Shown: positions 16,074 through 29,828, counted from the first letter of the whole stretch. The stretch is DNA of 63,205 bases, filler included, from Octopus bimaculoides (GCF_001194135.2; 7 parts of 6 records of this genome joined end to end with filler, not necessarily neighbours in it), one strand, 5' to 3'. The notes: a model not told the origin generated them from the letters alone. A program made the numbers and translations.

Positions 16074-16281
16074 ATGGAAGATCTCATTGAAGTGAAGACT
16101 GAGCCATGTCCAGCAAAATCTGGTCCCATTGTTATCTATTCTTCAGAATCTTTTGGAAAAATGACTGTAATCTTCATTCCAAAGACTAAGGCAGTATTTA
16201 CATTAATCGCATATGAGATTTACGACTCAATAGATGAGAAACTAAAGAATACACAGGCATTATCAGAGCAGATACATGAAA
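16074..16281 (+). CDS. MOV10-like: MOV10/Armitage/SDE3-like RNA helicase, exon 1 of 6 visible (MEDLIEVK...EQIHE)
   Basis: Polypyrimidine tract + cag acceptor, then ATG at 16074; donor GTGAGT at 16282; 208 nt, ends phase 1. Could be an internal exon rather than the true start. Confidence 0.75.
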
Positions 16282-16380
16282 GTGAGTTAACAAAAGCATG
16301 AAGTGTTCAATATAGCAGTGAATTATTTAATTTCATTTTCCAATTTATATATAAACTGCTTCCCTATCTGTTCTAATTAA

Positions 16381-16547
16381 CCCTTTCGTTACCAACCTGG
16401 CTAAAATTGGCACTGAGTATAAATGTTTTGTTTTCATAAGTTTTGAATTAAACTCTTCCAACTCTTTACTAAATTCATTGTTATATTTAAAATTAATAGA
16501 AAGAAAGAAACACAGAGCATCTCAACAGAAATATGGTAACAAAAGGG
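16381..16547. mobile_element. piggyBac-type MITE
   Basis: TTAA|CCCTTTCGTTACC...GGTAACAAAAGGG|TTAA. Confidence 0.8.
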
Positions 16548-16578
16548 TTAAAATATATAATAGAGAAACAATTCTTAA

Positions 16579-16800
16579 CCTTTTCATTACCAACCTGGCT
16601 GAAACCACCTCTGGCTCTGTTGTACAAATGTCTTGTTTTCATAAGTTTTGAATTAAACTCTTCCACCAAACCTTAGTCACAATTTATGTTCCTAACACTA
16701 GCTTAATGATAACTAAGTTATTTTACTAAATTCTTTGTTATATTTAAAATTAATTGAAAGAAACACAGAGCATCTCAACAGAAATACAGTAACAAAAGGG
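16579..16800. mobile_element. piggyBac-type MITE, longer copy of the same family
   Basis: TTAA|CCTTTTCATTACC...AGTAACAAAAGGG|TTAA; internal sequence shared with 16381-16547. Confidence 0.8.
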
Positions 16801-16939
16801 TTAATGTTGCTGGTAATGTTGATATGTTCGAATTAATGTTACTGGTAAACAAGGGATATTTGTGTGTGTGTGTGCACATGTATGCATATATGTGTGTAGA
16901 GATGATAAACACTGAAAATGTATGGAAAATAGAGTCCAT

Positions 16940-17300
16940 CAACTGCCAGGGGGTGGCGGGGCAAGCTAGAGGCAGTAGATAGCTTCCATTATCTAGGTGA
17001 CCAAGTTTGTAGTGGAGGTGGATTCTCTGAGAGCATAGCTGTGAGAATAAGATTAGCCTGGGCGAAGTTCAGTGAAACATGGACTGTGACAACAGAGGAC
17101 ATGCGTAGGCTTGAAAGAAATGAAGCCAGTATGCTTCGATTGATGTGCAATGTCAGTGAATGTTCAACAGAGTGTGCACAAGAAACAACTGCGCTGGTAT
17201 GGTCGTGATGCATATGGACGAGGATTGCAGTGATCTCTAATTGTGGAGGGAATCTGTGGAAGAGGTAAACCCAGGAAGACATGGCAGGAGGTGGTGAAGC
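16940..17300 (+). mobile_element. RTE-type LINE fragment
   Basis: KLEAVDSFHYLGDQVCSGGGFSESIAVRIRLAWAKF (RT thumb region). Confidence 0.8.
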
Positions 17301-17879
17301 ACGATCTCGTTCTCTCTCTATTTATCTATCTATCTATCTCTCTATGCGCTTATTTATTTACCATTGTGGTTTTTCAAAATATCCATCCATTTATTACTGT
17401 ATAACTGTTTCAACCAATACATCAAAAGGTTTTCGCCACGTTCTGGTAAACATGTCGTAAAGAGTTGTTTCCCCTTGCACGATCTAATACTCGGAGATTT
17501 TTTCTCTTTTAGTTAATGGTGCAGTTTTTCCTTTCTTTTTCTGAGTGTTTGTTATTGATGGTACTATGAACATTGGTGTTGAGACGGCTGAAGTGCAGTG
17601 ATCAGTCCATGGCATTGGAGAGCATAAAGATTGAAGTTGTAGTTGAGAGAAAGTTAGCAGACCGGAAGCCATCTTTATATTGGAAAAGAGTTACCTGTCA
17701 CCTGATGATTCATGCTGGGCATCAAGACGCTAACAATTTTGACTGATGCTCAATGCTCCGTGAACAGGGTAAAGGCTGTCAGACATGACATGAACGTCAT
17801 GGAAACCAAGTGTCCCCTCACCCCCCCAAAAAAACTGTTGGTCTTTGAGCGTCTCCAGTAGGGCTGATGTCATGTTGCC

Positions 17880-18330
17880 CCACATCTTTCAAACAGAACC
17901 TTAGGCTATGTGAAGCTGCTGGAGATTGTGGTCAAATGCTTGCTGAAGCGGGTTGTTGCTGGAAGGTCATATATGTGTGGGGGATGGTTCTGTTCCTTGT
18001 CATACTTGTGGAGAGTCAAAAGTGGTTGTCAGAATTTCTGTGAATTCACTGGCCCCTGCCCCCTAATTTACCCAGTGTCAATCCCATGGATTATTATGTG
18101 TGGGGCAGGATGAAGAAAGACACAAACTGCAATACCAAGATCGAAGAGGTATTCGAAGATCTTCCTAGTGAGGAACATATGTGCCAGCTTCCAGAGCCAT
18201 CTCGAAACTGAGGTTGGCTATTTTGTGTAAACTGTTATCTCCCAGCCATAATTTAGTTGATATTTTGGGATTTTCAGATTTATGTTTTCTTTTCCTTTCA
18301 TGTAAAATTCCAAATTTTGCATGAACACCC
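17880..18330 (+). mobile_element. Tc1/mariner-superfamily transposase relic
   Basis: Degenerate QDG..P.HT and NPMDYYVWG motifs; frameshifted. Confidence 0.6.
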
Positions 18331-27030: not shown

Positions 27031-27439
27031 GTAAGTTTATTCTTTCTGTTTTCGAGTTTGGAATGGCATTTAGCAGCAGATAACTAGTTGATCGCATAAA
27101 GAGGCTGATTTTTTCAGAAGCACAACTAAATCTCACTGAAATTACTGTGTAGCATTTTGTAAAGTGAGTGACAAATTGGATAATGTAGTCCAAGATAGAC
27201 AATCCATGAAAGGAGGACAGAATGGTCAGGGTTGAGGAAACAACTGCTTCTTCACAAACTAAGAAGATTGTTTCCCAGCCAACAGGTTTCAGGTTCAGTC
27301 CCACTGTGCAGCATTCTGGCTGCCTTATACCATAGCCCCAGGCCAAACAAAGCCTTATCGTTAGATTTGGTTGAGAGAAACTGAAGGAAGTGTACAGTGT
27401 CTGTGTAATGAAAAGTTTCAAGGACCCAAAATTGTTTTT

Positions 27440-27960
27440 CTCCATGTGGTGAATCTATAATATAATTGATATATATAAACGTCTTTTGGACCGAAAAGTG
27501 ACTAGTGACGAGAAATGGGTTCTCTATAGAAATGTCCAGTACCAAAGACAGTGGGTAGGGAAAGGAAAAACACCAGCACTCCAGGCTAAAAAAGATCTTC
27601 ACCCACATAAGGTGTTATCGTCTGTTTAGTGGGATACAAAAGGTTTAGTCCACTTTGAACTTTTAAACTCAAACCATACAATAACAAAGGAGATCTATTG
27701 CGGGCAGCTTAAGTCCGCACTAGAAGGAACACAATCATTTTTGGTTTCAAGACGAAAGGTGTTCTTCCATCAGGATAATGCTCGGCCACATCCAGCGACA
27801 TTCCAAAGGCTGGAGCAGTTTGACTGGGAAACAATGCCCCACCCACCACATTGCCTCATCTGATTATCATTTGGACTTAAAAATATGAATTCTGTAGATG
27901 AGGTCAGAACTGTACTGGAGGAATATTTTTCATCACAGACAAGTGAATTTTGGATGATAA
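27440..27960 (+). mobile_element. mariner transposase relic
   Basis: VTSDEKWVLY, LHPHKV..WDTKG..HFELL, FHQDNARPH, HPP..SDYHL motifs. Confidence 0.88.
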
Positions 27961-28084
27961 TAAGTTCTGAGGTGAATTTGTTCAACTAAAACCTTTCAAG
28001 TCAGTGACCCAGCATGGCCAGAGTCAAATGACCAAAAGAAGTAAAAGAAAAAAAAAGGCTACATATATACATAGGGTAAAGAGT

Positions 28085-28390
28085 AAAGAGCCCTTTTGTT
28101 CATGACTGACCATAGGATTGCTCCTAGAAAGTTCCCCTCTTAGGCACAAGTCTGGGCAAGGTTGTTTATGGAAGACCAGTGATCGCCCGTGCGTACCAGC
28201 TTCTCTTCACCACGCCACTGATGTTATCCAAGGGAAAGGCAAAGGGGCCGATACAGCTTGGCACCACTGATGTCGCAACTCATTTCTGCAGCTGAGTGAA
28301 CTGGAGCAACATGGAATAAAGTGTCTTGCTCAAGAACACAACACACAGCTCGGTCGAACTCACAACCTCGTGACTGAGAGCCCAACGCTA
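28085..28390 (-). mobile_element. tRNA-derived SINE, family D
   Basis: Minus: gaggttgtgagttcga B-box-like head, then gtgttcttgagcaagacact..ccagttcactcagctg core. Confidence 0.65.
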
Positions 28391-29026
28391 GAATTTATGC
28401 TTCATATGCAATCAATGCATTTGAGCAGTATGCATTATGAGCACATCAGCAATAGAAAAATACACTCACTAATTGGCTTGTTAGTGGTTGACAGGTTTTA
28501 TTACTTAGGGAATATAATTAGCAAGTGAAGTGTTTTCTTTGAAAGTAAAGTAGCAAATGTAAGAAAGGGTTGGAGAAAATTGAAGGTAACAAAGTTTTTT
28601 TTTTCCCCCTTCAAAGTGAGGGAGGGTTAGGGGGTAGACTGCAATGCGAGGAAGAAAAGTGTTTGGGTAGGGAGATGGGGTGGCCATCTGTGTGAAGAAG
28701 TGTCAATCATTTAATGCAGGTGGAGATTGCAGAAAGACATGGGATGGAGTGATGGAAAGTTACCTGAGGAGCTTCATGGAACTTCACAGGGGAGATGACA
28801 AAGAACTGGAATGACTCTCAATATCAGGTTCTGAAAAAGACCTGACCCCTTTAGCAATACTGAGTTCAGCAAGTGCTGTACATATATATGTATATATGCG
28901 TGTGTGTGTGTGTGTGCACACAACTGATCCCTCTGCCAAATTTCTTCCTTAAAACAGCTTCCCACCCTTCATCTCACTGACTGCAGCTCTTTTTTTTTTT
29001 TTTTTTTTTTTTTCGTTATCCACCCT

Positions 29027-29290
29027 TCATCCATTAACATGATTCTCTCCGTTTATCACCTGGTTTACTATACGGGTGACTATGCCATAACTGACACTGC
29101 CGGATATTTTGAGCACCTCTGCAGTGATTCCTGATGGGCCGGGGGCTTTCCCTGTCTTCATATTCTTAATTGCTTTATCTACCAAGGTACTGTCAATTAG
29201 GATAGCTGGTCCCTCTGTTGGGTCGACATTTGGCAGACTATCTTTCTCCCATTCATTCTCTTTATTGAGCAACCTTTTATAGTGGCGTCT
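29027..29290 (-). mobile_element. RTE-type LINE fragment (start of RT)
   Basis: VDKAIKNMKTGKAPGPSGITAEVLK motif. Confidence 0.82.
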
Positions 29291-29654
29291 CCAAAACTGT
29301 CTCTTTGCAGCCTCGTTTACATATATATGTACATGTGTGTGTGTGTATGTATATAGTGGTGTGTTTGTGCCTGTTCCACTACCATCGCTTTGCAACCAAT
29401 GTTGGTATGTCTACATCCCCTTAATGTAGCAGTTCGGCAAAAAGAGACCAATAGATTAAATACTTGGCTTACAAAGAATAAGTCCTGGGTTCAATTTGTT
29501 CGACTAAAGGCAGTGCTCCAGCATGGTCGCAGTTAAATGACTGAAACTAGTAAAAGAAAAACGGAATATTAAAATGCTTCACACCTTCCACAACCGCTCC
29601 CCGTATTTTGATAAACTGTTTTTATAATTGCTGTTTCTGTGTCATCCTCCACAG

Positions 29655-29828
29655 ATTTCTCCAGATATTCAATCCAGATAAGGAATTTTATCTCCATTAT
29701 GAACCAACCAATTTTAATGCTTTCATGATGCATGCAGCACTGGATTTGATAGAAAGAGAAAATTTTGGAGATGTTATATTTCCAAAAGGGATAATACACA
29801 AAAGCCATGAAGATTCCTTGAAATTAAA
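29655..29828 (+). CDS. MOV10-like: MOV10-like exon 6 (FLQIFNPDKEFYLHYEPTNFNAFMMHAALDL...DVIFPKG...)
   Basis: ccacag acceptor, GTAAGT donor at 29829; 174 nt, phase 2-2. MHAALDL...VIFP parallels MOV10 QHRALEL...MLFP, just before the helicase core. Confidence 0.88.

What the first reader, a model, noticed from the sequence alone, without database searches (positions are those of the whole stretch)
16074..29828. Strongly diverged MOV10/Armitage-like helicase gene, assembled from six exons
Seen: six GT-AG exons (208, 235, 105, 169, 137, 174 nt) join in frame for 342 codons with no stop. Known: the order L..NY..K...L, Y.G.V......L.F, H.AL.L, FP is that of MOV10/SDE3/Armitage proteins just upstream of the SF1 helicase core; these proteins restrict retrotransposons and act in small-RNA pathways. 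The usually conserved LEE and VPG..E.RPS..GD motifs are replaced by LCL and MNTDELYVGA, and the N-terminus is short. Inference: a fast-evolving lineage-specific paralog, which is interesting in a genome this loaded with LINEs and SINEs.
Basis: partly seen in the sequence, partly recalled or inferred. Interest (0 to 1): 0.7.

Follow-up and report, generated by a model that had tools for sequence, protein, structure and literature searches.

The report
Divergent MOV10-family helicase gene, 5′ part
The six exons are real and encode the front (pre-helicase) part of a MOV10-family RNA helicase gene in an octopus-like genome. It is unusually diverged in sequence but has the ancestral exon layout, so it is an unannotated, divergent member of a known family, not a new kind of thing.

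Summary
Observation confirmed. Six + strand exons (16074-16281, 19746-19980, 23261-23365, 24641-24809, 26894-27030, 29655-29828) all have a Y-rich tract plus YAG acceptor and a GTRAGW donor. They join into 342 open codons, and none overlaps a repeat.

A profile of 87 MOV10 N-termini matches the spliced peptide colinearly at 49 bits; the best of 300 shuffles scores 4.6. The introns flanking E4, E5 and E6 lie at the same positions and phases (2/0/2/2) as in the chiton MOV10 gene. Amphioxus shares the first three. This shows homology by descent and validates the gene model.

"Strongly diverged" is supported. Canonical MOV10s from sponge to amphioxus score 130-204 bits where this peptide scores 44. 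Pfam MOV-10_beta-barrel reaches only 18.2 bits (cut-off 23.6). The LEE.Q..D and VPG.AE.RPS..GD signatures are lost, and E5 is exactly five codons shorter than its chiton counterpart.

Not shown:
- A helicase core; there is none in the 2.4 kb downstream, and the gene runs off the piece.
- That the N-terminus is short; the piece ends 360 nt upstream of E1.
- That this is a lineage-specific, fast-evolving paralog rather than the MOV10L1/Armitage ortholog or a recent pseudogene.

No similar protein was found in the large public collection.

The parts
16074..16281 (+). Exon E1 (208 nt, 69 codons + 1 nt). It starts with ATG directly after a strong acceptor (tttactttcag|ATG) and is followed by a phase-1 intron. 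It encodes a beta-rich segment, presumably the first half of the Ig-like domain.
   Evidence: Strong acceptor and gtgagt donor. Recovered by the blind splice + ORF scan. No sequence homology is detectable: no Pfam hit, and BLASTP against chiton exons 2+3 gives E=1.3. The phase-1 intron after it matches the chiton exon 2/3 junction inferred.
19746..19980 (+). Exon E2 (235 nt). It covers the second half of the beta-rich N-terminal domain plus the L.P.APYKP linker motif. It lies between a phase-1 and a phase-2 intron.
   Evidence: ttatttacag acceptor and gtaagt donor, found by the blind scan. Its ORF ranks third in the six-frame scan with the MOV10 N-terminal profile (5.8 bits, profile positions 36-71). 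It lies within the 49-bit colinear alignment. 'LEPAAPYKP' aligns to 'LAPTAPYKP' of a fish MOV10.
23261..23365 (+). Exon E3 (105 nt, 35 codons), with phase-2 introns on both sides. It is the linker before the helical domain and the least certain exon.
   Evidence: tattttgtag acceptor and gtgagt donor. Including it raises the profile score from 41.4 to 49.2 bits; the four same-length alternatives give 41.8-46.7. It restores the spacing between APYKP and ENY. Its counterpart is chiton exon 4 (144 nt), which ends in phase 2. It failed my strict pyrimidine-tract threshold.
24641..24809 (+). Exon E4 (169 nt). It encodes the helical domain (LTPENYVEKMKLMIDL...) and the first barrel strand (DIFEFE). 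A phase-2 intron precedes it and a phase-0 intron follows.
   Evidence: Strong splice signals, blind scan, colinear profile alignment. The homologous exon is 163 nt in chiton and 160 nt in amphioxus, with identical flanking intron positions and phases.
26894..27030 (+). Exon E5 (137 nt). It encodes the core of the beta-barrel (1B-like) domain, MNTDELYVGAFLYVYERDGDSVSPIRYEGRVKDLNSDFATLEFPK. A phase-0 intron precedes it and a phase-2 intron follows.
   Evidence: Second-best ORF in the six-frame profile scan (7.1 bits). Part of the Pfam MOV-10_beta-barrel hit at aa 247-298. AF2 with the MOV10 alignment gives pLDDT 82-92 here. The chiton counterpart is 152 nt, which is 137 + 15, so the five missing codons are the VPGxA part of the signature.
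29655..29828 (+). Exon E6 (174 nt). It encodes the end of the barrel plus the stalk helix and the FP motif (FLQIFNPDKEFYLHYEPTNFNAFMMHAALDLIERENFGDVIFPKG...). Phase-2 introns lie on both sides. The next exon, which would lead into helicase motif I, is not in the piece.
   Evidence: Best ORF in the six-frame profile scan (13.9 bits). Pairwise 31 bits to fish MOV10 over aa 262-331. The chiton counterpart is 186 nt with the same two intron phases. No helicase-core exon lies in 29829-32275, and an assembly gap sits at 31143-31483.

Best explanation
The six exons are the 5' coding part of a genuine, intron-containing MOV10-family gene. This family consists of UPF1-like superfamily-1 RNA helicases.

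The genome is Octopus or a close relative, and the introns are full of SINE, LINE and mariner debris.

Reading along the encoded protein, the segments are:
- a beta-rich N-terminal domain (E1-E2);
- the APYKP linker;
- the MOV10 helical domain (E3-E4);
- the MOV10 beta-barrel (E4-E6), which corresponds to domain 1B of UPF1-like helicases;
- the stalk helix ending in FP (E6).

In every family member this arrangement leads straight into RecA1 with motif I. That part must lie beyond the right edge of the piece.

The exon layout is the ancestral bilaterian MOV10 layout. The sequence has drifted far. Hydrophobic core positions are kept, but the polar signatures LEE.Q..D and VPG.AE.RPS..GD are gone.

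Inferred, not shown: the full protein is a 5'->3' RNA helicase. Its barrel and helical module sits on RecA1 and shapes RNA binding. It would act on retroelement or small-RNA-pathway transcripts, as MOV10, MOV10L1 and Armitage do.
For: - Splice signals and the blind scan.
- Open frame of 342 codons.
- Exons free of repeats.
- MOV10 N-terminal profile at 49.2 bits, colinear from aa 99-337 to profile positions 36-277. Against the vertebrate-only profile the peptide scores 44 bits, and the best of 300 shuffles scores 4.6.
- The top three ORFs in the six-frame scan are those holding E6, E5 and E2, in order on the + strand.
- Pairwise hits up to 33 bits to fish and scorpion MOV10, in the pre-helicase region.
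- Pfam MOV-10_beta-barrel, E=0.0017.
- Four intron positions and phases (2/0/2/2) identical to chiton MOV10, three of them also in amphioxus. Exon sizes are 169/137/174 nt here against 163/152/186 in chiton.
- AF2 with the MOV10 alignment gives pLDDT 82-92 for the barrel, and Foldseek then finds the UPF1 helicase-core 1B/stalk region. This is partly circular, because the alignment is made of MOV10s.
- Of 50 columns that are at least 80% conserved in MOV10 N-termini, 16 are identical and 14 similar, mostly hydrophobic. An intact frame at about 20% identity argues for long-term selection.
- The LINE tail at the piece's right end is closest to Octopus bimaculoides proteins.
Against: - No helicase-core exon is in the piece, so 'helicase' is an extrapolation.
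- The Pfam barrel hit is below the gathering score, and there is no hit to Mov-10_helical or MOV-10_Ig-like.
- E1 has no homology support, and E3 is only the best of several options.
- No protein in the 5.8-billion-cluster collection resembles the peptide even at E<=10. That collection includes Octopus bimaculoides proteins and transcript-derived Logan proteins. So there is no annotation or transcript evidence for this gene.
- Nearly invariant family motifs are lost. This would also fit relaxed constraint.
Confidence: 0.78

Rival explanations
1. The locus is the octopus ortholog of MOV10L1/Armitage, the single-copy piRNA-biogenesis helicase. Its N-terminal region differs strongly from MOV10 proper. 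On this reading the 'divergence' is simply the old MOV10/MOV10L1 split, not recent fast evolution.
For: My comparison set came from a MOV10-like helicase bait, and its named members are MOV10-type proteins, so low scores against it are expected for a MOV10L1-type protein. MOV10 and MOV10L1 share only about 31-34% identity, with N-termini less conserved than C-termini, and Armitage groups with MOV10L1 (PMC9319325). No taxon-specific affinity appears in the best pairwise hits, which are fish and scorpion.
Against: From my own knowledge, unverified here, the VPG..E.RPS..GD signature is also kept in MOV10L1, Armitage and SDE3. If so, its loss would be unusual in that subfamily too. No MOV10L1 or Armitage sequence could be fetched to test this.
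Confidence: 0.2
2. It is a recently inactivated or partial duplicate: an unprocessed pseudogene or an N-terminal-only fragment of a MOV10 paralog. The frames are still open, but it is no longer expressed as a helicase.
For: No matching annotated or transcript-derived protein exists in a collection that includes Octopus bimaculoides and Logan assemblies. Nearly invariant motifs are lost and five codons are deleted. No helicase exon lies in the following 2.4 kb. The surroundings are repeat-rich and gap-containing.
Against: Six of six exons keep strong splice signals and 342 codons stay open despite about 80% amino-acid divergence from any known relative. Substitutions spare the hydrophobic core, and the 15-nt shortening of E5 keeps the frame. 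This is the pattern of a folded, selected domain, not neutral decay. Introns here run 1.3-3.5 kb, so a missing next exon within 2.4 kb that includes a gap means little.
Confidence: 0.15
3. The exons are chance open frames picked by eye in AT-rich, repeat-rich DNA, and the motif resemblance is coincidental.
For: 28 exon combinations of the stated lengths stay open. Pfam and PDB sequence searches alone give only sub-threshold hits or none.
Against: Profile score of 49 bits against at most 4.6 for shuffles. The blind scan recovers five of the six exons on the + strand against one candidate on the - strand. Intron positions and phases are identical to two distant MOV10 genes.
Confidence: 0.01

Closest known systems
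MOV10 (helicase MOV-10; e.g. chiton Liolophura sinensis P0058, amphioxus P0052, fish mov-10-B.1)
   Same: The order of modules is the same: APY.P linker, helical domain with L..ENY, beta-barrel with Y.G.V...L.F, stalk helix H.AL...FP. The intron positions and phases around the three exons encoding helical domain, barrel and stalk are the same. Lineage-specific MOV10 duplications are already described in several animals (PMC9319325).
   Different: It scores 44 bits where canonical members from sponge to amphioxus score 130-204. Pfam barrel is 18 bits against 81-110, and there is no Pfam helical-domain hit. LEE.Q..D and VPG.AE.RPS..GD are lost and five codons deleted. No counterpart of the roughly 200-aa zinc-finger-bearing first exon of chiton, and no helicase core, is in the piece.
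MOV10L1 / Armitage (piRNA-biogenesis helicases) and plant SDE3
   Same: They share the family architecture of an N-terminal barrel module in front of a UPF1-like SF1 core. They have roles in transposon silencing, which suits a repeat-laden genome. This rests on established knowledge and PMC9319325.
UPF1 (domain 1B barrel and stalk of UPF1-like SF1B helicases; PDB 2gk6, 2wjv, 2xzp)
   Same: The modelled barrel plus stalk (about 130 residues) superposes on the UPF1 helicase core region, with Foldseek E 7e-4 to 4e-3 and probability 1.00.
   Different: Only 13-17% identity. The model was built with a MOV10 alignment, so the match is partly circular. UPF1 has a CH domain, not an Ig-like or helical N-terminus.

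Membership tests
MOV10 family (MOV10/MOV10L1/Armitage/SDE3) | UPF1-like SF1 helicase core (RecA1/RecA2, motifs I-VI; Pfam AAA_11 + AAA_12) downstream of the N-terminal module | tested here: inconclusive
   A full-length MOV10 HMM and motif patterns find no helicase exon in the piece, including 29829-32275. The piece ends 2.4 kb after E6 and holds a 341-nt gap, while introns here are 1.3-3.5 kb. The core may lie just outside.
MOV10 family (MOV10/MOV10L1/Armitage/SDE3) | Colinear match to the family's pre-helicase region (linker, helical domain, beta-barrel, stalk) | tested here: met
   A profile of 87 family N-termini gives 49.2 bits, aa 99-337 to profile positions 36-277. Shuffles reach at most 4.6 bits. 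Pairwise hits reach 33 bits at the correct location.
MOV10 family (MOV10/MOV10L1/Armitage/SDE3) | Pfam MOV-10_beta-barrel (PF21634) at or above the gathering score | tested here: not met
   18.2 bits, E=0.0017, against a cut-off of 23.6. Only the second half of the model (positions 34-86 of 88) is matched. Canonical members score 81-110 bits.
MOV10 family (MOV10/MOV10L1/Armitage/SDE3) | Pfam Mov-10_helical (PF21635) and MOV-10_Ig-like (PF21633) / MOV-10_N (PF21632) | tested here: not met
   No hit at E<=10 for the whole peptide or E<=1 for E1 and E2 alone. Canonical members score 25-47 bits for the helical domain. The helical region does align inside the custom profile match.
MOV10 family (MOV10/MOV10L1/Armitage/SDE3) | Nearly invariant signatures LEE.Q..D.(..)Y and VPG.AE.RPS.L.GD | tested here: not met
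   The aligned residues are LKT.Y..N and a 4-5 residue gap followed by NTDELYVGA. Only N241 and G248 are kept. Across 50 columns at least 80% conserved, 16 are identical, 14 similar and 4 gapped.
MOV10 family (MOV10/MOV10L1/Armitage/SDE3) | Gene structure inherited from the family: intron positions and phases around the helical, barrel and stalk exons | tested here: met
   Octopus has phase 2 | 169 nt | 0 | 137 nt | 2 | 174 nt | 2. Chiton has 2 | 163 | 0 | 152 | 2 | 186 | 2. Amphioxus has 2 | 160 | 0 | 155 | 2. The junctions fall at the same aligned residues.
   No cephalopod MOV10 or MOV10L1 sequence could be retrieved.

The most novel reading that the evidence does not exclude
An octopus-lineage MOV10 paralog keeps the ancestral exon layout, but its regulatory module has been remodelled under positive selection. 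That module is the helical domain plus the 1B-like barrel that sits on the helicase core. It has lost two near-invariant surface signatures and carries a five-residue deletion. The change could reflect an arms race with the SINE and LINE load of cephalopod genomes, or a new RNA-binding specificity. The gene is absent from current annotations.
Probability: 0.25. Interest if true: 0.5.

Novelty: new member of a known kind. Interest (0 to 1): 0.3.

Why it matters
MOV10-family helicases restrict retrotransposons and viruses and feed small-RNA pathways. Cephalopod genomes are among the most repeat-laden in animals.

A divergent, apparently unannotated family member would add to the list of genome-defence genes worth testing in octopus. 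It would also be one more case of the lineage-specific MOV10 duplication and divergence already seen in fish, fly, ascidian and amphioxus.

As it stands, this is an annotation-level finding: a real gene fragment of a known family. Its interest depends on paralogy, expression and selection data that are not available here.

Tried and rejected
1. Two word-index searches of the 5.8-billion-cluster protein collection with the spliced peptide, at E<=0.01 and E<=10, returned nothing. The prefilter also missed fish MOV10s that score 33 bits locally. So this shows only that no close relative exists, not that there is no homolog.
2. phmmer against PDB sequences gave only noise. No MOV10 structure was found in the PDB by sequence.
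I used its single job on the LINE tail to identify the host lineage instead.
4. AF2 on the single sequence was useless, with pLDDT 32.
5. Alternative exon choices were rejected. E2 as 16970-17204 is a LINE tail and lowers the score to 38.8 bits. Four alternative 105-nt E3s, and skipping E3, all score lower. The candidate exon at 21897-22054 breaks the frame.
6. I looked for hidden VPG..E codons around the E4 donor and the E5 acceptor and found none in frame.
7. Direct similarity of E1+E2 to the chiton Ig-like exons was not significant.
8. Rfam found nothing in the piece.
9. A literature search for MOV10 in octopus or cephalopods turned up nothing specific.

Only the database proteins it retrieved were used as evidence.

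
Full report
**What is in the sequence.** The piece (15714-32275) is AT-rich, 35-47% GC, with an assembly gap at 31143-31483.

| Exon | Coordinates | Length (nt) |
|---|---|---|
| E1 | 16074-16281 | 208 |
| E2 | 19746-19980 | 235 |
| E3 | 23261-23365 | 105 |
| E4 | 24641-24809 | 169 |
| E5 | 26894-27030 | 137 |
| E6 | 29655-29828 | 174 |

The joined frame is open for 342 codons. The lengths alone are not unique. 28 combinations stay open, E3 has four same-length alternatives, and E2 has one, which is a LINE tail.

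**Splice signals.** All six exons have a pyrimidine tract plus c/tag acceptor and a gtgagt, gtaagt or gtaaga donor. I ran a blind scan of both strands for a strict acceptor, a GTRAGW donor and an open frame. On the + strand it returns E1, E2, E4, E5 and E6 plus one frame-breaking candidate at 21897-22054. On the - strand it returns a single candidate. None of the exons overlaps the SINE-like repeats that fill the introns. At this composition, 342 stop-free codons have a raw probability of about 6e-10.

**What it is.** Direct searches with the spliced peptide were weak:
- Pfam gave only MOV-10_beta-barrel at 18.2 bits, E=0.0017, below the 23.6-bit cut-off.
- PDB sequences gave nothing.
- The large protein collection gave nothing at E<=0.01 or E<=10.

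Only the retrieved database proteins are used as evidence.

Locally, the peptide hits them at up to 33 bits, always in the region just upstream of the helicase core. One alignment runs from aa 100 to 330 and includes LEPAAPYKP against LAPTAPYKP.

A profile built from 87 N-termini (start to GPPGTGKT) matches the peptide at 49.2 bits, colinear from aa 99-337 to profile positions 36-277. Against a vertebrate-only profile, 300 shuffles of the peptide reach 4.6 bits at most, where the real peptide scores 44.

In a six-frame scan of every open segment of the piece, the three best segments are those holding E6, E5 and E2. All are on the + strand and in profile order.

E3 at 23261 gives the highest score of its alternatives, 49.2 bits against 41.4 without it. 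It also restores the family's spacing between APYKP and ENY.

**Independent test: gene structure.** I fetched the chiton (Liolophura sinensis) MOV10 locus and solved its exon junctions exactly against the annotated protein. I then did the same for amphioxus.

| Species | Layout (intron phase \| exon nt \| phase ...) |
|---|---|
| Chiton | 2 \| 163 (SLMEKPLNEDTY...LLLE) \| 0 \| 152 (VPGLAENRPS...GFHQ) \| 2 \| 186 (LLQQYV...NEPL) \| 2 |
| Amphioxus | 2 \| 160 \| 0 \| 155 \| 2 |
| Octopus locus | 2 \| E4 169 \| 0 \| E5 137 \| 2 \| E6 174 \| 2 |

The junctions fall at the same aligned residues. FEFE|MNTDE matches LLLE|VPGL, and EFPK(K)|FLQIF matches GFHQ(S)|LLQQY.

E5 is exactly 15 nt shorter than the chiton exon, which is the five-residue gap at the VPGxA position in the HMM alignment.

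Upstream, chiton exons 2, 3 and 4 (257, 251 and 144 nt) parallel E1, E2 and E3 (208, 235 and 105 nt). There is a phase-1 intron between the first two in both species.

Shared intron positions and phases in three phyla cannot come from chance ORFs. They show descent from the ancestral MOV10-type gene and validate the exon boundaries.

**How diverged it is.** Against a vertebrate-only profile, trimmed to the region the peptide covers, MOV10s from sponge, coral, scorpion, tunicate and amphioxus score 130-204 bits. This peptide scores 44.

Pfam gives those proteins 81-110 bits for the barrel and 25-47 bits for the helical domain. This peptide gets 18 bits and none.

Of 50 columns that are at least 80% conserved in the family's N-termini, the peptide is identical at 16, similar at 14 and gapped at 4. 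The kept positions are mostly hydrophobic or glycine: L, Y195, V, G248, Y266, G268, V270, L280, F282. The lost ones are the polar signatures: EE.Q..D, Y219, PG.E.RPS, D249, H271.

An intact 342-codon frame at roughly 20% identity, with core positions spared, points to a folded domain under long-term selection. It does not look like old neutral decay.

The comparison set is biased towards conserved MOV10s, because it holds the top hits to a human-like core.

**Structure.** AF2 on the single sequence failed, with pLDDT 32. With the MOV10 alignment the barrel (aa 220-300) reaches pLDDT 82-92 and the helical part 69-77. E1-E2 are beta-rich at pLDDT 45-63. Foldseek against the PDB then finds the UPF1 helicase core over about 130 residues (1B barrel plus stalk) and DNA2. 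This is consistent but partly circular.

**What is missing or untestable.**
- There is no helicase-core exon anywhere in the piece. With introns of 1.3-3.5 kb and only 2.4 kb, including a gap, after E6, this says little.
- Only 360 nt lie upstream of E1. In chiton a roughly 200-aa first exon with a C2H2-like finger precedes the E1 counterpart, so 'short N-terminus' cannot be judged.
- E1 starts with ATG right after a strong acceptor. It may be the start codon behind a 5'-UTR intron.

**Host.** The LINE tail at 31918-32274 is 70-92% identical to proteins of Octopus bimaculoides, so the genome is Octopus or a close relative. The protein collection contains that proteome. The absence of any hit to the peptide therefore suggests that these exons are in no annotated or transcript-derived protein there.

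**Mechanism (inferred).** The full product would be a UPF1-like SF1 5'->3' RNA helicase. Its Ig-like, helical and barrel module sits on RecA1 and helps form or regulate the RNA channel. This draws on established knowledge of UPF1 and MOV10. It would act on retroelement or small-RNA-pathway RNAs. The remodelled polar surfaces could mean altered partner or RNA contacts.

**Rivals.**
- The MOV10L1/Armitage ortholog, about 0.2. This could not be tested. MOV10 and MOV10L1 are only about 31-34% identical, with weakly conserved N-termini (PMC9319325).
- A recently dead or partial duplicate, about 0.15.
- Chance, rejected.

**Verdict.** This is a real, divergent and apparently unannotated member of a known family. 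The claim of a lineage-specific fast-evolving paralog remains open. Interest is modest.

Noticed in passing
window 27453-27860 (+), intron 5: A mariner-type transposase fragment split by an internal stop. Pfam Transposase_1 gives 25 and 32 bits on the two halves.
   Followed up: partly
window 31918-32274 (+) and 16933-17205 (+): A LINE C-terminal tail with a PHD-like zinc finger, cut by the piece edge. Its best named relatives are Octopus bimaculoides reverse-transcriptase and PHD proteins at 70-92% identity. A shorter copy of the same tail lies in intron 1, 77% identical over 26 aa.
   Followed up: partly
window 15782-15961, 18867-19185, 19460-19555, 23896-24017, 24321-24515, 25373-25553, 25786-25936, 26466-26535, 30286-30440 and others: Many copies of one or two SINE-like repeat families, in both orientations, 62-94% alike. 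They fill the introns and the region upstream of E1, and none touches an exon. Rfam finds no tRNA or other RNA family in them.
   Followed up: partly
window 21897-22054 (+), intron 2: An open segment with a strong acceptor (three possible: 21897, 21954, 21990) and a GTRAGW donor at 22054. At 158, 101 or 65 nt it would shift the frame if included. It may be a cryptic or poison exon, or coincidence.
   Followed up: no
window 15991-16027, 19685-19720, 29834-29864, 31143-31766: (ATT)12 lies 47 nt upstream of E1. A T36 run sits just before the E2 acceptor, and a T31 run right after the E6 donor. The 341-nt assembly gap is followed by a 32-nt-period TA/TG tandem array of 8.6 copies.
   Followed up: no
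L002 6557-10074 (chiton Liolophura sinensis, CM072726.1) and L003 1-501 (amphioxus): In both public genomes MOV10 is annotated as two adjacent genes: an Ig-like N-terminal product, then the helicase product. In chiton, the exon ending at the G-run 9620-9623 joined to the acceptor at 9931 gives an immediate stop. One G fewer would fuse the two models into one frame. This looks like a homopolymer error or an annotation split.
   Followed up: partly
window 29027-29395 (-), intron 5: An open 122-aa segment on the minus strand that, by eye, resembles the N-terminal part of a retroelement reverse transcriptase (…KAPGPSGITAEVLK…). It has no Pfam hit at E<=1.
   Followed up: no
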